Assembly: GCF_032191835.1 (NCBI RefSeq)
Contig: NC_083237.1
Span: 24,056,001-24,120,000, forward strand
Source of the DNA: Heteronotia binoei
Lineage: Eukaryota
Reading direction: 5' to 3'
DNA: 64,000 bases
The translations under genes were made by a program, and so were the position numbers. Below are positions 281-62,439 of this stretch, piece after piece. Below the pieces are notes generated by a model. The model did not search any database. It was not told the DNA's origin and saw nothing but the letters and a program-made list of their open reading frames with translations. Each line of letters starts with the position of its first letter. The stretch's first letter is position 1.

Positions 281-1090
281 CTAATATGGTGCCCCTCCTG
301 GACCAGCGCCCTAGGCAGCCACCTAGTTTGCCTAGTGGAAGAGCTGGCCCTGTTTGCGGGACCTTTTTGTAAGCCTATATGACTGGCTCTAATAGGGGAG
401 GGATGTGCGCAGCACTGAAGCCCCATCCTCGATGTAGAAAATCAGTCAGCCAAAGCATTTGCTGCCACTGCTTGGCAGTTGTAAGGAGTACAAACTTGAC
501 TTTAAATTTTAAAGTAACAAACACCTACTTCTACAATGTAGTAGGGAGCCGTGGCCCAGTGTCCCAGGTTCGACCCCTGGCATCTCCAGTTAAAAGAATC
601 AGGCAGTAGGGGATCCTGAGACCCTAGACAGCCCCTGCCAGCCTGAGTTGACAACACTGACCTTGATGAACCTGCCCTCTTGGAGCCGGAACAGGGCAGC
701 CAGGAACTGGGACTGCTGGGTTCTCTAAAGCCGTCAGCCTCTGAGTCTCTTCTGGATTCTCTGGATGAAATGTGGTGTTTGGTGTTGATATGGGAGGTCC
801 AAGTTCCATATGTCTGTCTTGCTCATGAAGCTGTGATTATAAAAACCAGATAAGGATATGCAGGCGGTCACCTGTAATTCTTGCTTTAAGGTTTTCATCA
901 GTTTGGGCCCGGCAGGTTAAAGCAGGGCATGGATGGCATTTGGGACTCTCTGGGGCGGGGTGGGTTGAGCAGGGGCATCTGTATGAACGGGGGAAGGTGT
1001 TAGCTCACTGAGTCATGGCAAGGGAGGCAGCCATCCTGGGCTTCCTTCATAACGCCTCTCCCATCTCTCTCTCTCTCAATTCTGCTGCAG

Positions 1091-1440
1091 GTTCAGCCTC
1101 TGCTCCCGCCCCGTCTGCCTCCGGCACAAACCCCTTCCAGGCGACGGCAACCACCCCCCTTTCGCTCAACCAGCTGCGCGTCAGTCCGGTTCTCTCCCTG
1201 TCCCAGCCAGCACCCCCAGCTTTCGCCGCCACCGCTCCCATGGTCTCCGTGTCTCCCATGGCCCCCGGGATGCCCTTAGCCTCGGTCTCCCCAATGGTGG
1301 GGGTGCAGCCCTTGGGGGCTGTTCCGCCCATGGGCCTCCCTGCCATGGGGCTGCCCCCTCCTGCCATGCCTCCCGCTGGCATGGTCCCCAGCAGCACCTC
1401 GGCCTCCACCGTGGGGAGCACCAATCCATTCTTGCTATAA
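1091..1440 (+). CDS. EPN1: Epsin-1, last coding exon (C-terminal NPF region)
   Basis: Polypyrimidine tract and acceptor ctgcag|gttc at 1091 (phase 1). Translation ...GTNPFQ...[11 protein letters not shown]...TNPFLL* matches the recalled EPN1 C-terminus (TNPFQ..TLNQLRLSPV...NTNPFLL). TAA at 1438-1440. Confidence 0.92.
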
Positions 1441-5093: not shown

Positions 5094-6782
5094 ACTTAGA
5101 GCCTGACAGCTCATCCTTTAGGATGGTTCATTGCCTAGATTTGTAAACCACTTATCCTTTAGGGTGGTAAATTGCTTCGATTCAACACACTTTGGAACAT
5201 CTCTGGACTGTGAGAAAATTGTCTGTCTTGGGAAAGGAAAGAGCCAAGTACTTGGGCCTCATACCAAGGCTGGTGGGCGGAGGGCCTTCTGAGTCGAGGG
5301 TCTGTGTGTGATCTGAGGGTCAGGCATGGGCAGAGCTCGGTTACTTCTCCGCTATGTGATGGCTCAAAGCTAAATAATGAAGCAGCTCCATTCGAAAGTA
5401 TTGCAGACTTGATATTGAAAGCCAAGTTCTGCGTTGAAGCATGGGGAGAAAAATCCCATTTCTGCCCCTGCAGGAGCTCAGATGTTTTATGGCTGTCCTC
5501 AGGCCGCCCCCAACTAGTCATTAAGAGTATCTCCTGCTGAAGGACTGGCACTCCAGCATTCTTTCTTGTGTTGCCATTTAAAGACTGCACCTTAGCTTAG
5601 ATTCACTCTCACTATCTAACCTGGGGGCAGACAAACAAACTCGTGCCCTGTGGGATTGAAGGAGTTAACTGCAGTCCCTTCTCCTTATTCCGAGGTAAGT
5701 GTGGCCACTTGAGTACAGACATGTGGGTAAAGACATCAGTCTCCCAATGTTCTTAACAATTAATAAAGAAACATTCATTTTTGAAACTCTGGTGCAAATG
5801 AGCAAAGATCAAAAGAAAGTGATTTGAACCCTGAGTATCTTAAAAGATGGTTAGAATGGTGTTGGAAAGTGCCGTCCAGTCACAGCCGGCTTGCAGCAAC
5901 CTAGTAGGGTTTTCAAAGCAAGAACCATAAAGAGGCGGTTTGCCATTGCTTGCCTCTGTTTAGCCACCCTGGACTTCCTTGGCGGTTTCCTATCCAAGTT
6001 CCAACCAGGGCTGACCCTGTTTACCTGATAAGATTGGACTAGCCATCAGGTCCAACGCCACAGAATAAAGGCAGGTTATTTATTCTTACGATTGCACATT
6101 TCAGAGATGTTTCAGTTATCTGTGTTTCACGATATAGGGTTACTGCCCAGTGTTCAGCAGCATGTGGTCTTGGTTGATGGTGTAATGGAACTCCGGGGTG
6201 CGAGAGCTCCAGGTGAGAAGGCAACACAGCTAAGCTAACTCAGAAATAAGGCCTTCTTCAGCCTGCCCAGGGGCTTTAGAATCTACACTGGCCACTCCTG
6301 GAAGTAATCTTCCTTTTCCTATCCCAAGGGGAAGATGTGCTTTTCCCCCAGTCCTTTCCTGTCCCAGATTTGGTGGTTTAAATGTGATTTTTTTCCCTGT
6401 CCTTTGTTCTTCCCGGGCTAAGTCCACTTGCATATTGTGGAGCTGGATAGATCCAGTGCCGAGAGAGGAGTCCTAACCAACCTCAATTTCCCCTTGTTTC
6501 CAAAGCTTGTGAAAGATGCTTCATAGCCTCCACGCTTGTGCACAGTGCCAACCCAGCTATTGTCACCTTTTATGTAAATTCTGAGGGGTGAGGCGTTTTA
6601 TTGCAAGGTAATTAATTTGTTGTGGCATCGCGGTATGCCTTTCAAAGGATGGATTCAGAGCTTGATGCCCTAAGAAGAATAGATATCAGACCCCAAAAAA
6701 GGTCATTATTTATGGTTAACAGTTTAATTTCTGGCTTTGTTGTATCTTGGATGCCTTTGAGCTCTAAGCATGAGGCTGGGTT

Positions 6783-7131
6783 CTAGCTTGGTGGGCTCCA
6801 GATATGTGGTGGGCTTGGAATGGGTTCAAGGTTTTGGTATGTTGGCATGTTTTGGTATAACGGTTTGTTTTGATATGTTGGTGCATTTTGGTATAGTGGT
6901 TTGTTTTGGTATGTTGGCACGTTTTGGTATGCTGGTACATTTTGATATAGTTGGCTTCGAGTAGATGATGGGTTCGGGGCATTTGTGGAGTTTGGAGTCT
7001 TCTCTGCTGGAGGACTTGCGACACCTGTGTCTTCTGACCACTCTGAACTCCACGAGTCATCTGAACTTTCTGTGCCATCATCCTCTTGAGCTTTGGTCTC
7101 TCCTTTCCGTGCCCTTTTGCGACGGTAGTAC
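6783..7131 (-). CDS. Unassigned IZUMO gene exon 7 (cytoplasmic tail)
   Basis: ctctttgcctacag|g acceptor, phase 2; basic stop-transfer YYRRKRARK, acidic Ser-rich stretch, 7 YQN repeats, TAG at 6785-6783; AATAAA on the minus strand at 6597-6602. Confidence 0.87.
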
Positions 7132-10100
7132 CTGTAGGCAAAGAGAGAAATGAGCACTAAGGCTGCAATGGGAAGACACTGCTTTAGTGTCTGTGGCTGT
7201 GATCTATGCTGAAAGAGGTATTCTAATTCTTAGTATTTATGTATCCTTTTTAGCAAGCATTCATAAGAAGAGAAGCCATGTTGGATCAGGCCAATGGCCC
7301 ATCCAATCCAACACTCTGTGTCACACAGTGGCAAAAAAACCCAGGTGCCATCAGGAGGTCCATCAGTGGGGCCAGGACACTAGAAGTCCTCACACTGTTG
7401 CCTCTCCCAAGCACCACAAATACAGAGCAGGATTCCTCCCCCCTTTCTGGCCTCTCAGCAACTCTAATTAGAAGCCCTTTACACAGAGAGCAATCCCTAT
7501 TAGGACAGTCAAAATGCAAAATCTTGATTAAACACGCAAAGTCCATAGCAGTGCTCTTAATTCCTAATCAGAGTCTTTTTCGATCAGAGCATACTGACTT
7601 TCTTTGATTCTTGGTTGATGCATGCAATTTAAAATCAAGACAAGAAAGTAGTTTTATGGGTACACTTGTTACCTTGCTGTAATCCTTACAACAGCCTTAC
7701 AAAGCAGGCCAGATGCAGGCCCACATCTGAGAGGAAGTGGTTTGCAGAAGGGTGGGTGGCAGCTAAGATATAAAACAAATTCTTGAGTCACAGCCGGTGT
7801 GCTGCCCTCCTCTCCAGGAGTACCCTATAATTGTATGGTCTCCCAGATTTAAGATTGTGGGACTCGCATAGCCAGGGCTTTTTTGTAGCAGGAACTCTTT
7901 TGCATATTAGGCCACACCCCCTTGATGTAGCCAATCCTCCTGGAGCTTACAGTAGGCCCTGTACTAAGAGCCCTGTAAGCTCTTGGAGGTTTGGCTACAA
8001 GAGAGGGATGTGGCCTAATATGCAAAGGAGTTCCTGCCACAAAATAAGCCCTGTGCATAGCCATAGACTGCTGCCCCCCCACATACATATATCTGTAGAC
8101 TGTATAGCCTTACCACACTCCAACACCAGCAGCAAGCAGGATCACAAGGGTCACCAGCACACCCGCAAGAACGTTGGGCCCTGTAGGAAAGAAACAGCAC
8201 CTCTTTCAGAAAGTGGAAGAGATAATCTGGGAGGGAGACAAGTTAGCAAAGGTCTCTTAGATCTACAGCAAATCAGTGCTGGCTCTGCAACCAGTATAGG
8301 TTTGCCTGGGGCAGGGGAGAATCTGTCTGCATCTCGAGAACAAAACTGGAGTGCAGGAGCACCTTTAAGACCAACGAAGTTTTATTAAGTTTAACGCCCC
8401 CCTCCAAAAAAAAAGACCAACGAAGTTTTATTGAGAATGTAAGCTTTCATGTGCTAAAAGCACACTTCATCAGACAATGAAATGGGGTACAGTGTGCAGT
8501 GCTACATATAGCTTGTGGGCAGGGTTAAGCATGCAAAATAATACAAAATAAGAATCCAATGGCAAAATAGTGAAATTAACAAATTGAAAGAATAACAGTT
8601 TTTGGTCTGGATAGTATAAGTTGCCTGGGAAAACAGCAAAAAACAGTAAACATGTCGGAATTGGAGAATGATGGTGAGAATGGCAGTAAATGAGAAACCA
8701 GCACCCTAAAAAAAAGTAAGATCGCCAGCTTGTGACTGCAAATTGCACTGCTGTGCCTGTCCTAAACGGATGCAAAGGAAATGTAAATACTGTTGTGCCA
8801 CGTGGCTTAAATCAATAGTAAGTGCAGAATTGCTTTGTGGCATAAAGATGTCAGCAGAAGCTCCCAAGTTACATACAAGGTATGTAGGAAAGTAACTGCA
8901 GGTATCTGCAAGGAGCACGTGGGCCCTGGGGCTTCAAGTGCCATTCTCTTGGGCAGATAGTGATCGAAGGGCAAAGATAACTAGGCCAGGAGAAGAAGAT
9001 TGTTCCTTTGGGTCTGCCTGCCCCATAGCCCTGTGAACAGGGCTAGCTGAATTAAAGAACTGAGCCTAAGGTGATCAGGTGAACTCCAGGGCTGTGTGTG
9101 TCCTCTAAGCTTCTACTCTGCCTTACTGTAATTGGCTGCTAGTCTGTCTTGGCTGGAGGAGGAGAAGCAGCTGTGATTGGTGGATGAGGTGGAGATGGCA
9201 ACGGAGAGAGACCAGTTACCTGCACATAATAAGGAATCGTTGCAGGGTGCTTTGAGCAGGTGGCAGTCCCTACACTCTGCCACTTCATAAGGTCGAAACC
9301 GGATCTGCTCTGTGTAGGGAAAGAGAGAAGGGTAGTGAGATTTTAATGTGAGCACACACAGAGGAGAAAGTGTCAAGGGACACCCTGAGTTGTAACTGCT
9401 GAAACCGTATGTTGTTATGTGGGCATGCGATAACAGCTTGTGGGGAGGTATTTTTGCATACCCCACTGGAATGAACCTGTCTGTGCACCACCACCATGCC
9501 ATGCTGCCCTCGGGAAAATGATTATGCATTCAAAACAATCCTGTATTTGTTGAACTTTGCTGCTCAAAGGTCACTACAGCAGGATCTCCATTGCTCCAGG
9601 GCTACTTACTCTGTTAATTTAATCCTCCCAGAAATAGGGTGGTCCCACTTCGGAGGAGGGAGGAGAAATAGCTGGATCCTACCCTTTATGCTTAACGGTA
9701 TTCTCTCACACACAAGCAAATCGGAGGCTAACACACACAGATGCCAGATGGCTAGACGGGCACATTTAGTCTGGGCAGATGGACTCACCGCAGGAGGCGC
9801 TGCAGACTGTGAAATTGTAAAGAGAGAAACAAGGGATGAGACAGACCTGGGAAATCTGGTCCCCTTCTGGCCAAAGAACCCAAATCCTAACTCTTCCCCC
9901 AACCCCAACAGGCCATCTGTGGAATCCATCCCATACAAGTTCAAATTGGCCAGAGGTGCTGCCGCCACCTCCTCTTAACAATCCAGTCTTAAGCTCACAG
10001 CCTAGTTTTGTGTCTTCACTGGTCAGGCAACCCAGCTTCTGCGCTGGCAGTCCCCAAAACAGACTAGAATCTCTGCTTGACCCATAAGCAGACTTGGGAA

Positions 10101-13100
10101 GCGGAGGGTGATCTTGCAAATATACATGTGTCTTAAGTAGGGAAGCATTACCACAATATGATTTCTCTCTACCCGCTCCCCTCACCTCTTGAATGCAGCT
10201 GTTGCCATGACCCAAACATGAGGTGGATACATTTTAACAGGATTAAACAGACATGTCTAGCTTTTCCAGTCACTGGTTGCTTCTCCAGGAGCAGCTTGTC
10301 CTGTTTAAGAAGGGTGCTGCTCTGACTTCCGGGATTGGAAAATGGTGAGCTGAGTTGCTTTCCCTAACGGGGGCAGGCTGGCACTTCTGTTCAGGGTAGT
10401 AAAAGGCAAATTAATGCCTTCTTCCTACGTTTCTCAGCTAGAGAATTGTCCAAGATATGCACAGATACTTTGAGGAGACTTACCTTGGCTGAAAGGGAGT
10501 CCCGGGGGGGGGGGTGGGGATCCTTTGAGGGATCTCCGGAGAGAAGTTGCATATTCATCGTCTGCAGAAGTTTCGAGAGTCATTAATTTGACATAAGCGT
10601 GACAGGATCCAAACCTTCTTTTACAATTTTAAACATCTAATCTATAAAGGACTGGTGTTGATTTGGATAAACTACAGAAAAAAGGTACTGATTGCTATCT
10701 CTTCACTCCGGGACTAATTAAAGTTAAACAAAACAAAAGTAAAAGGTGGGAGTTGGAAATACTGAAAGCCTGAAAGGAGAAGATGATAAGGGGCTAAATT
10801 TGAACTTTGTAAACTTAAAAGACAGTGTTAAGAGAAGAAAGGAATTTATTGTTTAGTCTATCTGTGGTTGAGGAGGCAGCCCCATCGTCACAGATCTGCA
10901 GCATTCACAGTCAACACAGGAAATATGTCAGATATCGTGAGATTTCTCTACCAGTGAAACGAGATTTGAAGGCAAGAAAAGCAGGAAGTATTGGAGGAAG
11001 AAAAAGGAAGTCAACAAAGTAAACAGCCTACTCTAGGATTATAATACCAGAGAGAAACATCGGTGACCATTGTTGTTGGGAGGACTAAGTTTTAACATCG
11101 TTTTTAAAGTGAGTGGGACATTAAAAATTGGTGGAGTTAACAGATTTGGCAATTTAAAAATTACTACTGTTGGATAGTAGATAACAAGATTTGAACTGGT
11201 AAAAGGGAAAAAAGAAACATTTTTTAAAGTGAAGCAAAAGTTGCGACTGCCATTTTGGGAGAAATAAAAACTTTAAACATTAATATCTGAGCCTGGGAGG
11301 CTAAGAGGACAGCGAAATTGGGTGCATTGGAAAGGGTAACCTTCACTTTATCAAACCTGATGGTTCAAATTTAATTTGGTGAGATCAAAATTTTTGATCT
11401 TGTTTTACATGTCAGACCCGAAACAAACTCGTGCTAGGTCTGCTTCAAGAGAGAAAATGCAAGCCCAATTAGATGCAATGGAAGCTAGGATAATGAAGGG
11501 GGTGAAAGAAATGATAACTGCCTCTAAAAAAATAAGAAAGGATATTGAGGACTCAAAGAAAGAATTAAAAAAAGAAATAGAGAATCTCAGAAATGACACT
11601 GTGGTAATAACAAAGAAAGTACAAGAAGTGGAAGAGAGAGTGAAAACACATGACTCCACCTTGTTAAAATTACGAGAAAAAGTGACAATTCATGACTGCA
11701 AACTGATGGAAACTCAGATCCATCTGAGAGGTGTACCTGAAGATGAAGAATCAGACCTGAAAGAATACATAATAAAAATAATTGCAGAATTTTTGGAGGA
11801 AGATCCTGAAGGGAATAGAAATATGTATGTCTATATGTATAAATTCACTCTATGCAAAAAAGAACAATCTGCCAAGAGATGTGGTCATAAGATTTATGAC
11901 AAAAGAAATGGTGGGAAAGATCATGAATGAAAACTTTGAAAAATCATTGACAGTGGGAGGCAGTAGAATAAGAATTATGAAAGAACTGCCAAGACAAGCA
12001 CTAACTGACAGAAAGGCATATAAAAAATTGACAGAAAAACTACATGACAATGGAATGAGGTACAGATGGATAATACCTGAAGGTTTGAGCTTTGAACTTC
12101 AAAGGAAAAGGATTACAATCACAAATATACAGGAACTGCGTAGATTTTATGAAGAAAATAAAGAATTTGCACCATGATGGATTATAAATTGATATCTTGG
12201 AATGTAAATGGACTAAATTCACCACAAAAAAGAAAGGCAACATTTCACTGGATAAAAAACAAAATTGTAATATAATATGTTTACAAGAAGTGCATATTAG
12301 ACAAAAGGATTATAAATTTCTATGGAATAAACAATTGGGACTAGAATTTTTTACATTGGCTGAACAGAAGAAGAGAGGAGTAGTCTTTTATATTAAACAA
12401 GAATTAGACCCAAAATTGGTATTTAAAGATAAAGATGGAAGATATATAGCAGTAGAAATTACTTTTGAGTGCAAAAAAAAGTTGTTGTTGGGACTTTATG
12501 CTCCAAATGGTGCTAAAGACATTTTTTAAAAAAAAATTACACAACATTTTGATGAAGTGACCTATGAGCAAATTTTATTGATGGGGGACTTTAACGGAAC
12601 AATTCAAAATACTATAGATAGATCTGCAAAGAAAAAAATGATAAAGAATGGAAATTGCCAAAGTCTTTTTTTGAATTGGTTAAACAGGAGAGTTTGGAAG
12701 ATATATGGAGGAAGTTTAATCCTGAAGTACGGAACTATACCTTTTCAGCTAGACATAGCTCTTTCTCTAGAATTGACATGTTGTGGGGTACTAAAGATTT
12801 GGGACTTATAACAAAGAAAATAGAGATATTACCTAAAATAGGAGCTGATCATAACCCAATAATGTGGATTACAAAACTGTCGAAAAAGTCAAGAAGATGG
12901 AGATTAAATGAAGACTTACTACAAAATAAAGAAATAGTGACATCTCTAGAAAATGAAACCAAAGTGTACTTCCAAGTAAATGACAGAGAGGATATAGAAT
13001 TTCAGACGGTATGGGATGCCTACAAGGCAATAATGAGAGGATTACTAATAATATTGAATAATAAAGACGAGAGCAAAAGATAAACAGATGTTGGACATTC

Positions 13101-16100
13101 AAAATGAAATTAAGAAAAAAGGTGAATTAAGGAAAAGGCCAGGAAAAAAGAAAATTATTTGGGAGATTAGAATATTGCAAGCACAAATGAGACATCTGTT
13201 AAATAAAAAATTGGAATGGAATTTGAAAAAATTAAAACAGAAATCTTTCGAGGGAGCGAATAAACTTGGAAAATATTTGGCCTGGCAATTGAAGAAAAAG
13301 AGAGAAAGTAAAATTATTAATAAAATTGTGGCTGATGGAAGAGAGATGGTAGATCAAGAAGGAATAAAGAGAGAATCTTTTAAATATTATGCTAAACTAT
13401 TTAAAGGTGTTAAAGTAAAGAAGGAAAAGTTGGAAGCGTATTTGCAGACGATTAAAATAGCACCCTTAACTGATTATATGGGAAAAGTTTTGAATGATCC
13501 AATTGAAAAAAAATAGAAATTGAAGTAGCAATTAATGCAATAAAAATTGGAAAGGCACCTGGACCAGATGGATTTACGGAAAATTTTTTTAAAACGTTTA
13601 AAGAAGAATTAATACTGAGACTTCAAAAATTAATGAATGTGATAAGAATAAATGGGAAAATACCAAATACATGGAAGGAAGCGGTAATTTCGTTGATTCC
13701 AAAGGAAGATAGAGATGTCACTAATGTAAAGAATTATAGACCAATTTCATTATTAAACAATGATTATAAGATCTACACAATCTTAGCAGAACGGCTTAAA
13801 CAATATTTAATAAACTTTATAAAGGAAGACCAAGCGAGTTTTCTCCCTAAAAGGCAAATAAGAGACAATATTAGAACTGTTGTAAATATTGTAGAATACT
13901 ATGAAAGACATCCAGAGAAGAAAGTTGCATTATTTGGTGTAGTGGTTAAGTGTGTAGTTTGGTGTAGTGGTTAAGTGTGCGGACTCTTATCTGGGAGAAC
14001 CAGGTTTGATTCCCCACTCCTCCACTTGCACCTGCTGGAATGGCCTTGGGTCAGCCATAGCTCTGGCAGAGGTTGTCCTTGAAAGGGCAGCTGCTGTGAG
14101 AGCCCTCTCCAGCCCCACCCACCTCACAGGGTGTCTGTTGTGAGGGAAGAAGACATAGGAGATTGTAAGCCGCTCTGAGTCTCTGATTCAGGGAGAAGGG
14201 CAGGATATAAATCTGCAATTCTTCTTCTTCTTCTTTGCGGATGCAGAGAAAGCTTTTGATAATTTGAATTGGGACTATATGTTTGCAGTAATGGAGAAAA
14301 TAAAGTTGGGGGAAAACTTTATAAGAATTATAAAAGCAATTTATACTGAACAACGTGCAAGGTTATGTATAAATGCAGATCTTACAGAAGAAATGATAAT
14401 CAGCAAAGGTACAAGGCAAGGTTGTCCACTTTCACCATTATTATTTATGACTCTTGAAATTTTATTGGTGCAAATACAAGATGATGAAGAAATTGAAGGA
14501 ATGAGAATTAAAGAATTTTCCTATAAATATAGAGCATTTGCAGATGATATAATGTTTATAAATGAAAATCCTATGCAAGTAACACCTTTGTTGTTAGCCA
14601 AAATACAAGATTTTGGAGAATTGGTGGGACTTTATGTTAATAAAGAAAAGTCAAAAATTTTGTGTAAAAATATGCAAGTAAGTAAACAAAAGGAATTGCA
14701 GAGATTAACTGGATGTGAAGTTACCCCTAAAGTAAAATATTTGGGCGTGGAAATAACAATGAAGAATATTGATCTGTTTAAAAACAATTATGAAAAGCGA
14801 TGGCGTAAAGTGGATGAAGATATGATAAAATGGAACATGCTTAATTTGTTATTTCTTGGTAGAATAGCTGCAATTAAGATTAACATCTTGCCGAGAATAA
14901 TGTATTTGTTTCAAACTATTCCGATTGTGAAAGACAGTAAACAATTTAATAAATGGCAAAGAAAAATTTCAGAATTTCTATGGGCCGGGAAAAAACCAAG
15001 GGTTAAAATGAAAGTTTTAACAGATGCTAAAGAAAGAGGAGGATTTCAACTACCAGATTTAAGATTATATTATGAAGCAGTTTGTCTAGTGTGGATAAAA
15101 GATTGGGTGACGCTGTTGAATAAAAAACTTTTAACATTGGAAGGTCATGGAAATAAATTCGGCTGGCACGCTTATATGTACTATGGAAAGAAAAAGTCGG
15201 ATGTTATTTTTTTCTCACCATTATATAAGAAATAATCTAATAAATATTTGGATGAAGTACAAGAAATATGGCGATGAGAGAAAACCACTATGGATAGTGC
15301 CAGCAGAAGTAATAAGAATAACAGCTGAGACAGGAGAGGAAAAAGGGATGTCATATAATCAATTACTAAAAATACAAAGCGGTAAAATAGAATTGAAAAC
15401 TGCTGAAGAGTTGAATAATAAATATGATTGGTTTCAAATGCAACAAATAAAAAGTTTGGTGGAAAGCGATGTTAAAATTGAAGGAATAAGATGAGAACAA
15501 ACAGAAATGGAAAAAGTTCTGCTTGGAGATAATGAAAAATTAATTTCAAAAATCTATAAGTTACTTTTAAAATGGTCTACGGAAGATGAAGTAGTGAAAT
15601 CTCAAATGATTAAGTGGGCAATTAATGTAAATAAAGAAATACAGATGGACACATGAGAATATTTGTGGAAGAACTCTATGAAACTCTCAACATGTCAGAG
15701 TATTAAAGAAAATTGTTTTAAGATGATGTACAGATGGTATATGACTCCTAAAAAGTTTGCAAAGATGAACAATAAGATGCCAGATAGATGTTGGAAATGT
15801 AAAAAACATGAAGGTTATTTCTACCATATGTGGTGGACTTGTGAAAGAGCAAAAAAGTACTGGCAGATTATTCAACAAGAGACTTCTAAGATCTTGGGAT
15901 ACAAATTTAACACAGTTGCAAAGACTTTTCTGTTGAGATTACAAATGGAAAAATTTCCAAAAGAAGATAGAACTTTAATTTGGTACTTTCTCTCAGCTGC
16001 TAGGACATTGTATGCGCAGTTGTGGAAGCAAGAAAAAATACCAGAGAAATGGGATTGGATTGTAAAAGTTATGACATGGAGTGAAATGGACAAGTTAACA

Positions 16101-19100
16101 AAAACCTTAAGAGACTATGATTTAGAAGTATTTAAGATGGAGTGGGAAAAGTTCAGAAGATACATAGAAAAAGAGTGGAAAATAAAAGGACATTGGACAA
16201 TTTTTGATAATGATTGAGTACAAGAGGGAGGAGGATATTAATTTTGGTTCTTATTAATTAAGGGTACCTTTAATATTAAGATTTTAAGTATATAACACCA
16301 GCGGGGGTCAAGTAACAGGGGGAGGGTGGGTAGAAAGTAATATATGGGATAGATTAAAAAAAAAGTAATGATGTAAGAAATTGAAATTATTACCATATGT
16401 TACTAATAAAATTGTTTGAAACCTAAACCTAAAGACGGATGCTGCTCTGGGTTCTGGCCACTTGCATGGGTGCGTCACATCCAGTGCTCCCTCTAAGCTG
16501 AGTGAGTGTGAGCAAGCTCACAGTTTTTTAGTTTCCAGCTCACATGTTTTTGCCTTAGCTCTGGAAAAATGCCCCCAGAGCAAACTGATTTATGCAGTAG
16601 CTCACAACCTTAATGCCAGTAGCTCACAAAGTGGAAATTTTGCTCACAAGACTCTGCAGCTTAGAGAGAGTATTGGTCACATCTACCTTCGTGCTTGCAA
16701 TAGTGTTTAAAGTGGCAGCACAGTGTCATTAGAATGTCTTTGTGTTGTTTTACTGTCTGCAGGGCTGGGCTCAGGCAGGTCCTTCTGGGTAGGGGAGCCT
16801 AGAATATGGTGACACCGCTGAGAAGGCCCTGCTAAGCCCAGACGCCCGTGGAATCCTCTTGAATGCAGCTATTTCCAGGAGTCATTTTGTAGAAAAATAG
16901 GTGGTGGAATTCAGGGGTTGTTATGCAGCTGCACCTACTATTCAATGGACAAGGTGGGGAGGAGGGGGAACACTCAGAAAGGTTCAGGAACTGTGCTTCT
17001 GTGAGTTCCTGCAGAATTTGAGGCCTGGCTATTTCCATGACCCAAACATGAGGTGGGTCGATTACCCAAACATGAGGAGGGTGGGTAGAGAGAAATCATA
17101 TTGTGGTAATGCTTCCCTACTTAAGACATTTCAGAAATTGGCAATTTTCACTCATGACGTCAAATTTGTAACAAACTTGTAGAGGGCATGGAGAAAATAC
17201 GCTTGGATCCCTTCACAAACTGCTCCTCCTTGTTACCTACATATCTGCAAAGAAGTACACCCCAGATCTTTCTATGGGACCTAGATACTCCAACTACTTT
17301 GAAAGGTGGATGTGATGTTTTTTGGTGGAGGGGTTTCAGTCAGCCAGAAAAGAGGGCTTTGGACAGCTGGGCTGAAGAGGGTTTTCCACAGTGCAGTTCT
17401 TCAAAGTTCTGCCTCCTCCCACCACTATTCTTCAGAGCCGGGGCCCTGCCCTCCTTTGCCTGTGTTAACTCTTGGAGGGGAGTGAGTGGCACTTACTTTC
17501 TTTCAGAAAGGTGCTGGATGCCTCTATCAATCTCTTGCTGAAATTCTGTTTTGCCTGCCCTGCCTTTGTCAGGAGGCGCTCAGGATCTGTGGGTAAAAGG
17601 AGCTGAGGTTAATGGAAGTCAGGGCTGGATGGCTGGAGGCCAGAGAGCTGGGTGGGAAGGAACTTACACTGACCCTCTACAATCTGGGAGACTCAAGTTC
17701 CAGTCCTCCACTCTGCCATGAAGCTCACTGGGTGACAGGCCTAATTGTCACACTCCCAGCTTCATTTACCTCACAGGGTTGTTTTGAGGATGCAAAGGAG
17801 GGAGAAAAGAGGGTTGTTATTAATTATTTAAATTTATGCCAACTCCATCTTATGGCCAACGCCGGGCTCTAGGCAATGTACAACTGTGGCCTGGGAAATT
17901 CATGGAGATTTGTAGTCAGTGTCTGCGGGGGTGGGGTGGGGATCTAAAGAAGGATTTCTGCCTGGAATCTATGGTATACCATAGGTATACATCCCTTTCT
18001 CCAGGGGAAGTGATCTCTGCAGTCTGGAGAACAGTGGTAATTCCTGGAGACCTCCAGTGGCCACCTGGAGGTTGGCAGCCCTAGCAGAGAATCAGGTGTA
18101 CTGCCCTGAGCTCTTCAGATAAAGGACAGGGTTTAAAAAAAATGTATTAGGTGGATGAGAACTTCTAGCAAGTGGGGTCGGGGGTGAGCCCACACATGTC
18201 TACCTATCATAGATGGCAACATTAAATGACCCGCTTGTGTAAAGAGGCTACCACATCAGGCACATGGTGCTTTTTAAAAGAAATCATTCAATGAATGATT
18301 GACTGATGGCTGAATTAATCATTTGCCAATATGTGGATCCAGTTGAAGGAAGCATATCCAAGTTCACGTAGCACAGATTAATGAGCCTGTAGCAGTTATG
18401 AAGCCTTGACTCCTGAGTGGTGAATTCATTAAGGGTGTTATAATGTATAAGACCCAGTGCTTTTTTGGGGCAGGAGCACACAGGAGCAGAGCTCCACCTG
18501 AGCTGGCCAGGGCTGCAGCTGGCACGCTGGAGAAGGCACAGGGAGGCACCTTTAAATGCCTCCCCAGTAGCTTCAGCCTTCTCCAGCACACCCGCTACAG
18601 TGGGTGTACTGGGAAAGGCAAAGGGGAGCTCCTGCTGGGCTTTTTAAAAAAACAAAAACCCTGATAAGACCAGTCAGCAACTGGAAAAGGAAATGCTCAG
18701 CTCCTACCTTTTTTGTTTTCCTGTGTGATCTGTTGAAGCTGAAGAAAGAGATTCCCAGTCTCACGCTGCATATCTTCCCACTCTGTAAATAACAAGGGGG
18801 GACAGACAAAGATATGCCTGGTGATGTTTGGTCCTTATCTAGTTCTCAGGTCTAAGCACAACACCTGTTCTACCCCCCTGGCCTAACACATCAGTTTTTC
18901 TGACCTTTTCATTCTCTGTGTCATCAGGACTGTAAGCAAGAGAAGGTGAGAGGGAAACCCAGTGTCCAGGTAGGGCAGCTGAATGGAAGGGCTACATACC
19001 TCCCAATATTGTTTTTCAGACTTTCTGTTGTCCCAGACACTGCTTCATGCCAATTTTTCTCCTTACTTGCATATTTGACATGGCATCTTTCAGCCCTGAA

Positions 19101-21916
19101 GATAATCTTGGGGCACTTTCTATGGTACGCCCAGTCTGGTGGGCCAGAATTCCCAAACAGTTTGAGGCTGTGGCTACCGTTAGAATGTCGAGAGGGGGTG
19201 ATGAGTGCCAGCACAAAATGGCTAATGGAATATCTCTCTCTGCATGGCTAATGGAATATCTCTCTCTCCCTGGGAAGAAGGAAATCCTAGAAAAGGAATA
19301 GAACCACACACTGACTGAAGGAAGCCCAATTGCTTTCCAATCTTCCCTATCCTGTAGCAGAAAGCTTTTTCATTTGTATAATGGAAGCATATAACAATCC
19401 CTGCCTTACAGTGGCCCCACCCACATTCTGAAAAAACTTAGCAAGTTGAGAAACCTTGAGGTAGGCCATTTTGGTGCTGCTGTGAACTCATGCCAAGAGT
19501 ACACCTTGGTACATGTTCCGCCTTTTCCAGTAGCTTCATATGTCAGAAAACCAGCAACAGCAGGTGTTAAATGGATAATTAATTCTCCATTCCTGATATT
19601 CTCATTGAAGAGCCTCTACATTTCTGAGGAGCTCTAGAATGATTTGAAAACCACTGCTAGGTAATGCAGGTCCCACACACTGCGTAAACCATGTGTGTGT
19701 TTTGTGTGAGAAGCTGGGCATCTGATCCAAGATTACATCATTCCCCATTCCCAATTAAGATTCCAATGACCTGGGTGTTTGGAAGAAGAGAATGTCTTGT
19801 GGGAGACTCAAAGCACCTTTGTGTACACCTCTCCAACAAGAAACAGATGAATCTTTAGTTAATTTTCACAATCTATTCCACCCAAGGTATTGCGCTGCCC
19901 ATCTTTTCATCCCCATGCTCAGGTGATGGCGTGAGAAATCAAAGTGGGCAAATTTAATAAAAACAGGCTTTCAAATCCTGTGGAGTACAGGCCCAGAACA
20001 TTCTCCACTGCAAAAATCTACTTCACTTCATTCAAGGAACCCATAAAAGCAACAGCAGTTTCAAACAGTTCACATACATCACATATGGCAGCTATGCTGT
20101 CTGAACTAGCCTTGTGCTTGGACTGCTGATTGGCTGGGAGCCCTGTAGTAATTTGCTATCACGGGGCCGTTATCAGCCTTGGCAATTTTATTCTGAGGTG
20201 GTTGACTATACTGGATAAGAACATACGAACATAAGAGAAGCCATGTTGGATCAGGTCAATGGCCCATCTAGTCCAACACTCTGTGTTACACAGTGACTAA
20301 AAAAACCAGGTGCCATCAGGAGGTCCATCAGTGGGGCCGGGACACTAGAAACCCTCCCACTATGCCCCCCCAAGCACCAAGAATACAGAGCATCACTGTA
20401 CCAGACAGAGAGTTCCAGCAATATGATGTGGCTAATAGCCACTGATGGACCTCTGCTCCACATGTTTATCCAATATCCTCTTGAAGCCGTCTATGCTTGC
20501 AGCTGCCACCACCTCCTGTGGCAGTGAATTCCACATGTTAATCACCCTTTGGGTGAAGAAATACTTCCTTTTATCCATTCTAACTCGACTGCTCAGCAAT
20601 TTCATTGAATATCCACGAGTGAAGAATGATCCCCTTCACTCCTCTCCCATCTTCCCAGTACTGCCTAACCCTCATTTTTCTGTATCTGACCAACTGTTCT
20701 CTATATGTTGAATGGACTCAGGATGGCTTTATGGGATACTGACCCATTTGACCTTGATACTATCTAAATGTTGCTACTGTCATTATGATACTATTTAAAG
20801 AATTCAGAGTATTCATACTTGATCACAAAGGTCTGATCCAATAAAAGATCTTTGGCTATTTTTTGAGAACAGATAGAACTTTTTCTCCCTCTCCCAAAAT
20901 ACCAGAACTCAAGGGTGTCTAATGAAGCTGATGGACAGTAGATTCAGGATGAACAAAAAGGAAATACTGCTTAACACAATAAGTGATTAAAATGTGGGAT
21001 TTGCTGCCAGAGGATGACAGCTGCAAGCACAGACAACTTTACATAGGGATTAGACAGATAAGTGGAGGACAGGTCTATCGGTGGCTACTAGACATAGTGA
21101 CTAAAGGCGATCTCCACATTCAGAGGCAGTAAACCTCAATACTAGTGCTGGGAGGAAGGCCTTGGCCTCTATGCCCTGTTTGTTCGGGCTTCCAAGGCAT
21201 CTGGTTGGCTACTGGGTGAGACCGAATGCTGGGCTAGAAGGACCACTGATCTAATCCAGCAGGACTTTTCTTGTGAGAAATTTCCTAATATCTAAGGAGC
21301 AGGGCATAGAATCATAGAGTTGTAAGGAACCTCCAGGGTCATCTAGTCCAGCCCCCTGCACAATGCAGGAAATTCACAAATACCTCCCCCTAAATTCACA
21401 GGATACTAATTGCTGTCAGATGACCATCTAGCTTCTTGTTTAAAAACCTCCAAGGAAGGAGAGCCCACCACCTCCTGAGTAAGCCTGTTCCATTGAGGAA
21501 CCGCTCTGTCAGGAAGTTCTTCCTAATGTTGAGGGGAGTTTGTGGTGTCCAGACCACAGGATTACAGGGCTCTTCATACAGGGCCTACTGTAAGCTCCAG
21601 GAGGATTGGCTACATCAGGGGTGTGTGGCCTAAAATGCAAAGGAGTTCCTGCTACCAAAAAAGCCTACTAAGGAGTCATCACTTTGCTCCCCCCCTCTTT
21701 CCATCCTGTACCCAGAAATCTGTTGCCGCAGGTGTCACATTTTCCAGTGCTCCCCAGGAAAAGCGTCTCCAGCTTTTCAGCAACATCTTTGTTCCCACCA
21801 AGGAGAAGCTGCACATCATAGCGGAAATACTTGGCTGCATACGGCCAGCAATGGAGGCACGTGTCAGCCAGCTGCACAAACAGGGCCCAAATCAGCAGTC
21901 CAGGTAAACATGCCAT
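6783..21916 (-). CDS. Unassigned IZUMO-family type-I membrane protein, 7 coding exons, about 297 aa
   Basis: complement(join 21712-21916, 18708-18782, 17497-17586, 9789-9806, 9220-9309, 8114-8180, 6783-7131) = 894 nt. All introns are GT-AG with compatible phases and no stops. Protein: MACLPGLLIWALFVQLADTCLHCWPYAAKYFRYDVQLLLGGNKDVAEKLETLFLGSTGKCDTCGNRFLEWEDMQRETGNLFLQLQQITQENKKDPERLLTKAGQAKQNFSKRLIEASSTFLKEICSASCEQIRFRPYEVAECRDCHLLKAPCNDSLLCAGPNVLAGVLVTLVILLAAGVGVWYYRRKRARK...(xYQNxP)x7...WSPPS*. Exon sizes and Cys spacing mirror IZUMO2/3 in this window. Confidence 0.88.
6825..6950 (-). repeat. Coding 18-bp tandem repeat, 7 units (xYQNxP)
   Basis: LYQNVP AYQNVP TYQNKP LYQNAP TYQNKP LYQNMP TYQNLE; 126 bp = 7 x 18. 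Confidence 0.92.
7873..8053. mobile_element. Palindromic hAT-like MITE (cagggc TIR family)
   Basis: TIR cagggctt/aagccctg; TSD cgcatagc/tgcatagc. Confidence 0.8.
8114..8180 (-). CDS. Unassigned IZUMO gene exon 6 (transmembrane helix)
   Basis: tttcctacag|...|gtaagg; 67 nt, phase 1-2; GPNVLAGVLVTLVILLAAGVGVW. Confidence 0.87.
8357..8475 (+). mobile_element. Possible Penelope-like terminal fragment
   Basis: gcacctttaagaccaac..ttttatt..agctttc motif; similar pieces at about 60545-60600 and 63025-63110 (minus). The family call is from memory only. Confidence 0.35.
9220..9309 (-). CDS. Unassigned IZUMO gene exon 5 (CxxC...C...C)
   Basis: ttccctacacag|...|gtaact; 90 nt, phase 1-1; EQIRFRPYEVAECRDCHLLKAPCNDSLLCA. 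Confidence 0.85.
9789..9806 (-). CDS. Unassigned IZUMO gene micro-exon 4 (CSASC)
   Basis: Long pyrimidine tract tttcacag|18 nt|gtgagt; equivalent to ACSEDC (IZUMO3) and ACDKATC (IZUMO2). Confidence 0.85.
11409..12177 (+). pseudogene. L1 ORF1 (coiled coil plus RNA-binding region), frameshifted
   Basis: ORFs 11376..11930 and 11782..12177 in different frames; heptad-like N-terminus followed by an L1 ORF1p-like C-terminus (LRGVPE, PRDVVIRF). Confidence 0.8.
12174..16217 (+). pseudogene. L1 ORF2 (APE endonuclease, RT, CCHC), with several frameshifts and stops
   Basis: LISWNVNGLN, ICLQE, MGDFNG, SRID, DHNP (endonuclease); NYRPISLLN, QGCPLSPLLF, AFADD (RT); CWKC...HMWWTC; split across many ORF fragments. 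Confidence 0.92.
13933..14233 (+). mobile_element. tRNA-derived SINE (Squam3-like) inserted into L1 ORF2
   Basis: Pol III A/B-box head tggtgtagtggttaag..ggtttgattccc; (CTT)n tail; interrupts KKVALF|FADAEKAFD. The family name is tentative. Confidence 0.85.
17497..17586 (-). CDS. Unassigned IZUMO gene exon 3
   Basis: cttttacccacag|...|gtaagt; 90 nt, phase 1-1; DPERLLTKAGQAKQNFSKRLIEASSTFLKE. Confidence 0.85.
18708..18782 (-). CDS. Unassigned IZUMO gene exon 2
   Basis: ttatttacag|...|gtagga; 75 nt, phase 1-1, the same length as exon 2 of IZUMO2 and IZUMO3; EWEDMQRETGNLFLQLQQITQENKK. Confidence 0.85.
20216..21535. mobile_element. Cluster of CR1 3'-end fragments (about 20216-20620 minus, 20895-21275 plus, 21303-21535 minus)
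   Basis: cataagaacataaga.. and atagaatcatagag..gtcatctagtcca termini typical of CR1 3' ends; related copies at about 7259-7430, 23895-24015 and 45800-46020. Confidence 0.6.
21712..21916 (-). CDS. Unassigned IZUMO gene exon 1 (signal peptide, CLHC, extra CDTC)
   Basis: ATG at 21916; donor ctgg|gtacag; 205 nt, phase 1; lies in ORF 21668..22045. Confidence 0.88.
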
Positions 21917-22180
21917 AGTCACAGAACCAGAAGAAAAGGAGACACTTTCCAGCCAGACTCTGGCGGCAGCAGCTGTTCTCTCCCAATCTTCTCTTCGGCT
22001 TCTTACATCATATCCTGTTCTATCTCCAGCATCACAGCCAGTCACATTATCTGCTTATCCTCTCCTTGGCAGCACTTCCTTGTGTTACGGAGACCATTGT
22101 CTAGCCAACAATGCCTGACTTTAGAATGTTGCTTAGGCTGCGGTGTGTAGCTATGATGGGGAACCTGTTGCTATGGCAAT
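21917..22180. promoter_or_regulatory. Putative bidirectional promoter (unassigned IZUMO gene / IZUMO3) with X-box-like motifs
   Basis: Divergent ATGs at 21916 and 22173; GTTGCTATGGCAAT at 22167-22180 (RFX X-box-like) and GTTGCTTAGG at 22128. Confidence 0.55.
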
Positions 22181-43828: not shown

Positions 43829-44064
43829 TAGACTACAGAGTTGGAGTACTGCAACTGCAATTCTGCAACTGCAATTCCTTGAAAAGCCACTAGCTGGATG
43901 GTTCCTACTGAGAGACAGTAAGGCTGCTTTATAATGGTAAATTACCTGCAAATATACAAACACAAATCTGTTACCTGCATGGCTGCAGTTGTGTGTTCAA
44001 TTGGATGAAAAGCTAACCTCATGATAGTTCCTTGCATGGGGTGTGCATGTTTTCTGCTTCTATT

Positions 44065-62225: not shown

Positions 62226-62439
62226 ACACATGAAATGGCCTTATATTGAATCAGACTGCTTGTCCAATTTGGTCAGTGTTGTCCACTGAGACTGCCAGTG
62301 GCTCTTCAGGATGATCTCTTTCCTGGCAGAGGTCTTTCACATTACCTGCTACCTGATCCGTTAAATGGAGATACCGGGGATTGAACCTGGGACCTTCTGC
62401 ATGGCAAGCAAGATACTCTACCACTGAGCCACATTCCCT
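62226..62439 (-). mobile_element. tRNA-derived SINE of a third family (head ggctcagtggtagag...ggttcaatcccc)
   Basis: Intact A/B boxes followed by a non-tRNA body; related copies at about 541-670, 23144-23300, 33480-33842 and 50985-51200. Confidence 0.7.

What the first reader, a model, noticed from the sequence alone, without database searches (positions are those of the whole stretch)
6783..21916. A candidate additional IZUMO paralog hidden across seven scattered exons
Seen: seven exons with canonical splice sites and matching phases give a 297-aa protein with signal peptide, CxxC, three helix-like segments, CxxxC micro-exon, CxxC...C...C, TM helix and long tail. Established: this Cys pattern defines the IZUMO domain (IZUMO1-4, SPACA6, TMEM95 superfamily of sperm fusion factors). 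IZUMO1 and SPACA6 have an Ig domain before the TM and IZUMO4 has no TM. I see no Ig exon in 8181-9219, and IZUMO2 and IZUMO3 are already present next door. Inference: this is a distinct family member, possibly reptile-retained or lineage-specific. The ORF track shows only fragments of it.
Basis: partly seen in the sequence, partly recalled or inferred. Interest (0 to 1): 0.9.

Follow-up and report, generated by a model that had tools for sequence, protein, structure and literature searches.

The report
Gecko TEX51 gene beside IZUMO3
The seven scattered exons are real and encode a 297-residue sperm-type membrane protein, but it is the lizard copy of the already known gene TEX51, not a new IZUMO paralog; it lies head-to-head with IZUMO3 and has the same exon layout.

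Summary
On the minus strand, seven exons join into an intact 297-codon frame. All six introns are GT-AG, with phases 1,1,1,1,1,2. The exons are 21916-21712, 18782-18708, 17586-17497, 9806-9789 (an 18-nt CxxxC micro-exon), 9309-9220, 8180-8114 and 7131-6783.

The protein does belong to the IZUMO/SPACA6/TMEM95 (IST) fold superfamily and is distinct from IZUMO1-4, SPACA6 and TMEM95. It is not new or reptile-specific.
- Its relatives in about 15 squamates are named "testis-expressed protein 51" by NCBI.
- A model of the closest complete gecko relative matches mammalian TEX51 clusters best (Foldseek E 1.7e-7 and 1.9e-6, up to 31% identity), ahead of IZUMO3 (8.8e-3).
- A 2025 paper (PMC12615630) already places TEX51 in the IST superfamily and reports it in lizards, snakes and turtles.

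Added here:
- TEX51 sits 256 bp head-to-head with IZUMO3. Both genes have the same intron phases and identical 75/90/18-nt exons 2-4.
- The order epsin-TEX51-IZUMO3-IZUMO recurs in a second gecko, a turtle and an alligator.
- Squamate TEX51 has a long cytoplasmic tail that the aligned human entry appears to lack; here it carries seven YQN repeats.

Expression could not be tested.

The parts
21712..21916 (-). TEX51 exon 1 (205 nt). Start codon, signal peptide, first CxxC (C20/C23), helices 1-2 and a species-specific second CxxC (C60/C63).
   Evidence: phmmer E 5.5e-27 to the Gekko kuhli protein. TEX51 profile E 4.5e-21 in the own-genome search. tblastn of the Paroedura protein.
18708..18782 (-). 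TEX51 exon 2 (75 nt, phase 1-1). Start of helix 3.
   Evidence: Splice scan. tblastn 70% identity to P0013. Profile hit.
17497..17586 (-). TEX51 exon 3 (90 nt, phase 1-1). Helix 4.
   Evidence: 70% identity to P0013.
9789..9806 (-). TEX51 exon 4, an 18-nt micro-exon encoding the CxxxC pair (C125/C129).
   Evidence: Canonical AG/GT flanks. The same six residues are present in the Paroedura, Pogona, Podarcis, Sceloporus, snake and Anolis proteins. Paroedura also has an 18-nt exon.
9220..9309 (-). TEX51 exon 5 (90 nt). Beta-hairpin hinge with the second CxxC plus two further Cys (C142/C145/C152/C158).
   Evidence: Profile hit E 4.5e-9. tblastn 74% identity.
8114..8180 (-). TEX51 exon 6 (67 nt). 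Transmembrane helix.
   Evidence: Hydropathy peak at residues about 155-185. tblastn 87% identity.
6783..7131 (-). TEX51 exon 7 (349 nt including the stop). Basic stop-transfer residues, an acidic/Ser-rich block, seven YQN repeats and a conserved IPSPPHIW end.
6831..6954 (-). 18-nt tandem repeat (6.8 copies) inside exon 7. It encodes YQN at an exact 6-residue period (residues 244-280).
   Evidence: Tandem Repeats Finder. Motif positions.
21917..22172 (.). 256-bp spacer between the divergent start codons of TEX51 (-) and IZUMO3 (+). It is a candidate shared bidirectional promoter.
   Evidence: Start codons. The same head-to-head arrangement is seen in Paroedura with a gap of about 200 bp; turtle and alligator also have the two genes on opposite strands. 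Promoter activity is inferred, not shown.

Best explanation
This is the gecko ortholog of TEX51 (testis-expressed protein 51). It is a single-copy, seven-exon gene for a type I membrane protein.

Ectodomain: an IZUMO-like four-helix bundle tied to a two-stranded beta-hairpin hinge. Eight conserved cysteines hold it together, in the pattern CxxC ... CxxxC ... CxxC ... C ... C.

Likely function, by analogy with mouse TEX51: it acts in spermatids during acrosome attachment and sperm-head shaping, not as an egg-binding or fusion factor.

Tail: the squamate protein has a cytoplasmic tail of about 115 residues, with an acidic serine-rich block and tandem aromatic motifs (seven YQN repeats here). I read this as a sorting or adaptor-docking module.

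Origin: the gene most likely arose by tandem duplication within an IZUMO2/IZUMO3 array. It still shares a 256-bp divergent spacer with IZUMO3.

Shown here: the gene structure, conservation, purifying selection, the fold class, the match to TEX51 and the gene order.

Inferred: testis expression, the role in the acrosome and sperm head, the disulfide pairing, the tail's function and shared promoter use.
For: - Gene model: intact 297-codon frame with canonical splice sites.
- Relatives: about 15 squamate proteins, nearly all named TEX51 by NCBI, align along the whole length. Most of them include the micro-exon residues.
- Copy number: the TEX51 profile hits only this locus in the genome.
- Selection: dN/dS against Paroedura is 0.27, and the exon sizes are identical.
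- Predicted fold: an AF2 model of the Paroedura protein (P0013), the closest complete relative, has four helices, a hairpin and a membrane helix, with pLDDT 65.9.
- Foldseek against Swiss-Prot models: 15 of the top 18 hits are IST proteins. Human TEX51 has the highest identity, 25%.
- Foldseek against AFDB clusters: the top hits are mammalian TEX51-type entries (E 1.7e-7; E 1.9e-6 with 31% identity and TM 0.52). Human IZUMO3 follows at 8.8e-3.
- VIA-align against 48,161 solved chains: IZUMO1 Z 7.8, SPACA6 Z 7.2 and TMEM95 Z 6.4 all fall in the top six.
- hhalign of TEX51 against IZUMO3: E 2.9e-5, collinear, with every Cys motif aligned.
- Literature: TEX51 is an IST member with a four-helix bundle, beta-hinge, two CXXC motifs and a membrane helix. 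It is spermatid-specific and is reported in lizards, snakes and turtles. Knock-out mice show acrosome and sperm-head defects (PMC12615630; PMC12917576).
Against: - No transcript evidence. The only RNA-labelled runs that hold the locus cover introns and exons alike and show no spliced joints.
- Sequence searches reached squamates only. No mammalian or turtle TEX51 protein was retrieved, so the link to mammals rests on Foldseek, NCBI names and the paper's PSI-BLAST statement.
- ERCC3, which I recall lies near human TEX51 on chromosome 2, is on a different contig here (C21). Synteny with the mammalian locus is therefore not supported.
- The structural model has only middling confidence. It is of the Paroedura relative, not of the window's own protein, which has no reference that the folding tool would accept.
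- Foldseek against solved structures was not significant (best E 1.2).
Confidence: 0.88

Rival explanations
1. It is a reptile-specific IZUMO-family paralog. On this reading it is a sauropsid duplicate of IZUMO3 or IZUMO2 that databases have mislabelled TEX51, and it has no one-to-one mammalian ortholog.
For: - It lies in tandem with IZUMO3 and an IZUMO2-like gene and shares their exon layout.
- Profile searches retrieved squamate proteins only.
- The one marker tried for the mammalian TEX51 neighbourhood, ERCC3, lies on another contig.
Against: - The best structural hits are mammalian TEX51 clusters (E 1.7e-7 and 1.9e-6, 25-31% identity), three to four orders of magnitude better than IZUMO3 at 17%.
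- Human TEX51 has the highest identity of all Swiss-Prot hits.
- The genome holds no other TEX51-like locus.
- NCBI's names and the published PSI-BLAST survey agree.
- IZUMO3 itself moved to another chromosome in mammals (from memory, not tested), so lost synteny is weak evidence.
Confidence: 0.07
2. It is a decaying or unexpressed gene copy. On this reading the seven open exons survive, but the locus is no longer a working gene in this species.
For: - No spliced RNA was seen.
- No protein from the window's own genome turned up in the protein searches.
- A roughly 5-kb LINE sits in intron 3.
- This species has an extra, non-conserved Cys pair (C60/C63).
Against: - The frame is intact and all six introns have canonical sites.
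- dN/dS is 0.27, with both the ectodomain and the tail constrained.
- All eight family cysteines are kept.
- The RNA runs were small metatranscriptomes that look like genomic background, so they test nothing.
Confidence: 0.04

Closest known systems
Mammalian TEX51 (human A0A1B0GUA7; mouse Tex51)
   Same: - Type I membrane protein with a four-helix bundle, beta-hairpin hinge, two CXXC motifs and no Ig domain.
- Best Foldseek matches, at 25-31% identity.
- Same name given by NCBI to the squamate relatives.
   Different: - The human entry is 166 aa. The alignment ends about 13 residues before its C-terminus, so its tail appears short. The window protein has a 114-residue tail with an acidic/Ser block and seven YQN repeats.
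- Different neighbourhood. Human TEX51 is on chromosome 2. Here the gene sits between an epsin gene and IZUMO3.
- Testis expression and the knock-out phenotype are known only for mammals.
IZUMO3 (Pfam PF15005 IZUMO)
   Same: - Immediate head-to-head neighbour.
- Seven exons with identical intron phases (1,1,1,1,1,2), and exons 2-4 of exactly 75, 90 and 18 nt in both genes.
- Collinear hhalign match at E 2.9e-5 with all Cys motifs aligned.
- No Ig domain and a single membrane helix.
- Mouse knock-outs of both genes give acrosome defects (PMC12615630).
   Different: - About 21% identity in the profile alignment.
- IZUMO3 matches Pfam IZUMO at 4.3e-30, whereas TEX51 proteins do not reach the threshold.
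- The IZUMO3 tail is only about 18 residues.
IZUMO1, SPACA6 and TMEM95 (solved IST ectodomains)
   Same: - Same bundle-plus-hinge fold class: Z 7.8, 7.2 and 6.4, all in the top six of 48,161 chains.
- The cysteine spacings after the CxxxC are 13/3/7/6 here. As I recall, human IZUMO1 has 10/3/7/6.
   Different: - IZUMO1 and SPACA6 carry an Ig-like domain, which is absent here.
- Those three are needed for gamete adhesion or fusion, whereas TEX51-null mouse sperm can still fertilise.
- TMEM95 and IZUMO1 have their own separate loci in this genome.

Membership tests
IST superfamily (IZUMO1/SPACA6/TMEM95/TEX51) | N-terminal antiparallel four-helix bundle | tested here: met
   The AF2 model of the Paroedura relative has helices at 26-39, 44-55, 72-92 and 97-128. 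VIA-align gives Z 7.8 to IZUMO1, 7.2 to SPACA6 and 6.4 to TMEM95. This is a prediction on a relative, with pLDDT 65.9.
IST superfamily (IZUMO1/SPACA6/TMEM95/TEX51) | Pair of CXXC motifs linking bundle and hinge | tested here: met
   C20-x-x-C23 and C142-x-x-C145 are in the window protein. Both are invariant across 12 squamate sequences. The disulfide pairing itself is inferred.
IST superfamily (IZUMO1/SPACA6/TMEM95/TEX51) | Beta-hairpin hinge after the bundle, and/or an Ig-like domain | tested here: met
   Strands are predicted at 139-143 and 148-152. There is no Ig exon, as in TMEM95, IZUMO2-4 and TEX51.
IST superfamily (IZUMO1/SPACA6/TMEM95/TEX51) | Spermatid-enriched expression | tested here: inconclusive
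   The only RNA-labelled runs that hold the locus cover introns and exons alike and show no spliced joints.
TEX51 orthogroup | Closest similarity is to mammalian TEX51, not to another IST member | tested here: met
   In Foldseek against AFDB clusters, ranks 1-3 are TEX51-type entries (two are named TEX51; E 1.7e-7, 1.9e-6 and 2.6e-3; 23-31% identity). Human IZUMO3 follows at 8.8e-3 and 17%. Human TEX51 has the highest identity in the Swiss-Prot search. This is one-directional, and no tree was built.
TEX51 orthogroup | Single locus in the genome | tested here: met
   The squamate TEX51 profile hits only window exons 1, 2, 3, 5 and 6 in the 2.63-Gb assembly.
TEX51 orthogroup | Conserved synteny with the mammalian TEX51 locus | tested here: not met
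   ERCC3, which I recall as a neighbour on human chromosome 2, lies on contig C21 and not on C15. Only one marker was tried. Synteny is conserved among sauropsids instead.
Pfam IZUMO domain (PF15005) | Score above the gathering threshold of 25 bits | tested here: not met
   Window exons 1, 5 and 7 gave no IZUMO hit at E<=1. Of the four full-length squamate TEX51 proteins, only Pogona gave a hit, at 13.7 bits (E 0.1); the other three gave none. The neighbouring IZUMO3 scores 105.6 bits.
TMEM95 (PF15203) | Match to the TMEM95 model at this locus | tested here: not met
   The TMEM95 model hits C15:2,072,536-2,074,601, 22 Mb away, and nothing in the window.

The most novel reading that the evidence does not exclude
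TEX51 is a tandem duplicate born inside an ancestral amniote array in the order epsin, TEX51, IZUMO3, IZUMO2, myosin heavy chain.
- The array survives in geckos, turtles and crocodilians and was dispersed in mammals.
- TEX51 and IZUMO3 keep identical intron phases and identical 75/90/18-nt exons.
- The two genes share a spacer of about 250 bp that may co-regulate them. Their mouse knock-outs give similar acrosome defects.
- Squamate TEX51 also carries a long tail of tyrosine-based repeats that the aligned human entry appears to lack, which hints at a sorting or signalling role lost or never gained in mammals.

The TEX51 paper contains no mention of synteny, duplication or paralogs.
Probability: 0.55. 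Interest if true: 0.4.

Novelty: already known. Interest (0 to 1): 0.22.

Why it matters
As a discovery claim it does not stand. TEX51 is a named gene, and it was placed in the IZUMO/SPACA6/TMEM95 superfamily in 2025.

Two points still have modest value.
This included an 18-nt micro-exon that some annotated models omit (for example Gekko kuhli and one Hemicordylus isoform). No protein from this genome turned up for the gene, so it may be unannotated here.
- The locus gives a concrete account of where TEX51 came from: a head-to-head tandem partner of IZUMO3 with the same exon layout. This fits the similar acrosome phenotypes of the two mouse knock-outs. It also offers a testable case of a shared promoter for two spermatid genes.

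Tried and rejected
- Pfam on three candidate exons (1, 5, 7) singly, and on four full-length relatives: no IZUMO match above threshold.
- Earlier notes of this scan: nothing by place or by the word IZUMO.
- Rfam on the window: only a tRNA at 62366-62438. There was no mir-99/let-7/mir-125 cluster, which I would have read as a sign of the SPACA6 locus.
- My first guess for the CxxxC exon, around 18,050, sits in repeat-like sequence and has no usable donor. I dropped it in favour of the 18-nt exon at 9806-9789.
- RNA evidence: the single read-laying run on 6300-9900 showed contigs running colinearly through introns and exons, with no gene joints. It is therefore uninformative.
- Foldseek against solved structures: IZUMO1 ranks first, but at E 1.2, which is not significant on its own.
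- Profile search for mammalian or turtle TEX51 proteins: squamates only.
- ERCC3 as a synteny marker for the human TEX51 region: it lies on another contig.
- An RFX X-box-like palindrome at 22167-22180 overlaps the IZUMO3 start. It is only loosely kept in Paroedura and was not found in the turtle or alligator, so I did not pursue it.
- The look-up of encoding contigs on the Heteronotia binoei IZUMO3 protein returned nothing. The tool warns that records of the window's own genome, or of one very near it, may be left out.
Full report
**What is in the sequence**

The window is G000:C15:24,056,001-24,120,000 of a 2.63-Gb vertebrate assembly.
- The ATG is at 21916 and the first donor at 21712/21711.
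- A splice-site scan between 21,712 and 9,300 found only a few open AG...GT exons with good scores outside the LINE region at about 11.3-16.3 kb. Three of them chain in phase: 18782-18708, 17586-17497 and an 18-nt exon at 9806-9789.
- With 9309-9220, 8180-8114 and 7131-6783, the seven exons give an 894-nt frame of 297 codons plus a stop.
- All introns are GT-AG, with phases 1,1,1,1,1,2.

The product has these features:
- a hydrophobic N-terminus;
- cysteines at 20/23 (CxxC), 125/129 (CxxxC, the micro-exon) and 142/145/152/158 (CxxC...C...C);
- one strong hydrophobic segment at about residues 160-183;
- a 114-residue tail.

**Is it real?**

- Exon 1 alone, searched with phmmer against 1.8 billion representative proteins, found 12 hits. 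The best is 81% identical over all 68 residues (E 5.5e-27).
- The full-length hits align with the model along its whole length. Most of them contain the six residues of the micro-exon. A few predictions skip that exon or exon 5. These may be annotation slips, since both exons are short and skipping either keeps the reading frame.
- tblastn of the Paroedura picta protein (P0013) places every exon except the micro-exon at my coordinates.
- P0013 threads exactly onto its own locus with exons of 259, 75, 90, 18, 90, 67 and 364 nt. The internal sizes are the same as here.
- dN/dS between the two geckos is 0.27 overall, 0.29 for the ectodomain and 0.18 for the tail.
- A profile of 12 squamate sequences, searched against the whole genome in six frames, hits only window exons 1, 5, 6, 3 and 2 (E 4.5e-21 to 0.27). 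The gene is therefore single-copy.

**What it is**

Nearly all the relatives carry NCBI's name "testis-expressed protein 51". They come from Paroedura, Hemicordylus, Pogona, Podarcis, Zootoca, Sceloporus, Anolis, Notechis, Pseudonaja, Crotalus, Pantherophis and Python.

TEX51 is a known gene.
[quoted passage not shown] - The paper reports spermatid-specific expression.

I tested the fold and the link to mammals on the closest complete relative.
- **Model.** The AF2 model of Paroedura TEX51 residues 17-215 has pLDDT 65.9. It shows four helices, a two-stranded hairpin and a membrane helix.
- **Swiss-Prot models.** In Foldseek, 15 of the top 18 hits are IZUMO1, 2, 3 or 4, TEX51, TMEM95 or SPACA6. 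Human TEX51 has the highest identity, 25%.
- **AFDB clusters.** The first three hits are TEX51-type entries. Two are named TEX51 and all are mammal-sized, at 180-204 aa. Their E-values are 1.7e-7, 1.9e-6 (31% identity, TM 0.52) and 2.6e-3. Human IZUMO3 follows at 8.8e-3 with 17% identity.
- **Solved structures.** VIA-align against 48,161 chains puts IZUMO1 (Z 7.8), SPACA6 (Z 7.2) and TMEM95 (Z 6.4) in the top six. SPECT1, the known structural analogue of this bundle, scores Z 6.1. Each Z is middling for a helical protein. Finding all three solved IST ectodomains together at the top is the telling part.
- **Weaker results.** Plain Foldseek against the PDB ranks IZUMO1 first, but without significance. 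Pfam's IZUMO model misses TEX51. A profile-profile comparison with reptile IZUMO3 gives E 2.9e-5 over 175 collinear columns, with every cysteine motif aligned.

The other candidates are accounted for elsewhere on contig C15.
- TMEM95 lies at 2.07 Mb.
- IZUMO1, with its Ig exons, lies at 24.485-24.497 Mb, about 0.4 Mb from this gene.

**Caveats on orthology**

- I could not retrieve a mammalian TEX51 sequence, so I built no tree.
- The sequence-profile search reached squamates only.
- ERCC3, which I recall lies near human TEX51, is on a different contig.
- I therefore give about 7% to the reading that squamate "TEX51" is a sauropsid-specific IZUMO-array duplicate that has been mislabelled.

**Surroundings**

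The plus-strand neighbour is IZUMO3.
- A hairpin-exon query returned IZUMO3 from many squamates, turtles, an alligator and a ground squirrel.
- The 214-residue Heteronotia binoei IZUMO3 protein threads through the window at 100% identity. Its seven exons are 22173-22404, 22492-22566, 23550-23639, 25375-25392, 25501-25581, 28087-28177 and 29554-29611.
- Its exon sizes are 232, 75, 90, 18, 81, 91 and 58 nt, with phases 1,1,1,1,1,2. TEX51 has 205, 75, 90, 18, 90, 67 and 349 nt with the same phases.
- Exons 2-4, including the cysteine micro-exon, are identical in length. The two start codons face away from each other, 256 bp apart.

A third gene on the minus strand has the same layout.
- Its first exon is near 37,922-37,676 and matches Pfam IZUMO at 4.2e-6.
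- It has a 21-nt micro-exon and a hairpin exon.
- A myosin heavy-chain N-terminal exon lies about 9.6 kb past the window's end.
- In the alligator, the equivalent 219-residue IZUMO gene is followed by a myosin heavy-chain gene.
- Human IZUMO2 sits beside MYH14, as I recall. On that basis the third gene is probably IZUMO2.

The order epsin (ENTH), TEX51, IZUMO3, IZUMO is the same in three other species.
- It is seen in Paroedura, Chrysemys and Alligator.
- TEX51-like exons are detectable in collinear order in the turtle and alligator loci.
- The alligator copy is an unnamed 147-residue gene model, and crocodilians are not mentioned in the TEX51 paper.
- The window's own epsin is represented by its last coding exon at 1012-1437. 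I recognised it by its NPF motifs and its resemblance to epsin C-termini as I recall them; the match to the ENTH gene at the same position in the other loci is inferred.

Taken together, this points to tandem duplication as the origin of TEX51. The array would be at least as old as the common ancestor of squamates, turtles and crocodilians. The paper does not discuss synteny or duplication.

**How it most likely works**

Shown here:
- a secreted-pathway type I membrane protein;
- eight conserved cysteines spaced like those of IZUMO1, where as I recall the four pairs staple the first and last helices to the hinge;
- sequence constraint on both the ectodomain and the tail.

From the literature:
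- Mouse Tex51 is spermatid-specific.
- One knock-out line gives hypofertility, with loosely anchored acrosomes, cytoplasmic remnants and flagellar defects (PMC12615630).
- Another line has normal litter sizes, but over 80% of sperm have malformed heads (PMC12917576).
- The authors liken the role to that of IZUMO3.

Inferred for this gene:
- The same role in acrosome and sperm-head formation.
- A tail that acts as a sorting or docking module. It begins with basic stop-transfer residues. An acidic serine-rich block follows and is conserved across squamates. Then come tandem aromatic motifs.
- In this gecko the motif is YQN, seven times at an exact six-residue period, encoded by an 18-nt DNA repeat. 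In other lizards it is YEN or YAN, and in snakes and iguanians it is PSPPEF/Y.
- These motifs resemble YxN and YxxPhi or PPxY short linear motifs. That reading is a guess.
- The human Swiss-Prot entry is 166 residues, and the alignment ends about 13 residues before its C-terminus, so the long tail appears to be absent there.

**Expression**

- One search found three small RNA-labelled runs from a single study that hold part of exon 7 and the 3' flank.
- Laid on 6300-9900, their contigs run straight across the exon 7 acceptor, both sides of exon 6, the exon 5 donor and the micro-exon.
- No joints correspond to the introns. The pattern looks like genomic or unspliced background and settles nothing.

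**Verdict**

- Observation: confirmed.
- Interpretation: right about the fold family and about the gene being distinct from IZUMO1-4, SPACA6 and TMEM95. Wrong about novelty, because this is TEX51.
- Novelty: already known.
- Residual interest: the conserved TEX51-IZUMO3-IZUMO2 array with its matching exon layout, the divergent spacer, and the squamate tail.

Noticed in passing
window 22173-29611 (+): IZUMO3 gene with seven exons: 22173-22404, 22492-22566, 23550-23639, 25375-25392, 25501-25581, 28087-28177 and 29554-29611. The 214-residue Heteronotia binoei IZUMO3 protein threads through them at 100% identity, which suggests the window comes from that gecko or a very close relative. The protein matches Pfam IZUMO at 4.3e-30.
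   Followed up: yes
window about 31,280-37,922 (-): A third IZUMO-domain gene. Exon 1 matches Pfam IZUMO at 4.2e-6. It has the same layout, including a 21-nt Cys micro-exon near 33,900 and a hairpin exon near 32,700. It is probably IZUMO2, because a myosin heavy-chain N-terminal exon lies about 9.6 kb beyond the window's end, as beside the equivalent gene in the alligator.
   Followed up: partly
L003 9,737-11,857 (-), Alligator mississippiensis; L002 4,747-8,305 (-), Chrysemys picta: TEX51-like exons (exon 1, exon 2, exon 3 and the hairpin exon) lie in collinear order, head-to-head with IZUMO3. The alligator gene model is an unnamed 147-residue product, and the TEX51 paper lists lizards, snakes and turtles but not crocodilians.
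   Followed up: partly
window 11,361-16,214 (+): A degraded LINE lies antisense inside TEX51 intron 3. It has a coiled-coil ORF1-like frame and a reverse transcriptase split over several frames (Pfam RVT_1 at 6.5e-21 and 3.6e-8). It accounts for the AT-rich, G-skewed stretch at 11-16 kb.
   Followed up: partly
window 1012-1437 (+): Last coding exon of an epsin gene, with NPF motifs and ending in NPFLL. It lies tail-to-tail with TEX51, as the ENTH-domain gene does in the Paroedura, turtle and alligator loci. I did not resolve which epsin paralog it is.
   Followed up: partly
window 43,259-43,996 (-): A long open frame with a weak match to Mpv17/PMP22 (E 0.089). It resembles the first coding exon of an MPV17L2-like gene and lies between the IZUMO2-like gene and the myosin gene.
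   Followed up: no
window 22,167-22,180 (+): An X-box-like palindrome (GTTGCTATGGCAAT) overlaps the IZUMO3 start codon in the spacer shared with TEX51. A similar palindrome is present in Paroedura, but none was found in the turtle or alligator. It may be an RFX site for spermatid expression, or it may be chance.
   Followed up: partly
window 21,727-21,738 (-), TEX51 residues 60-63: This species has an extra CxxC (C60/C63) in the loop between helices 2 and 3. Gekko kuhli and Paroedura keep only the first of the two cysteines, and other squamates have neither.
   Followed up: no
window 7,268-7,400 and 7,880-8,060: Two interspersed repeats in TEX51 introns 5 and 6 are present at very high depth in the RNA-labelled runs (summed contig depth 10^5-10^6). 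They look like highly abundant, possibly transcribed SINE-type elements of this lineage.
   Followed up: no
window 62,366-62,438 (-): A tRNA gene or tRNA-derived element (Rfam RF00005, 44.8 bits).
   Followed up: no
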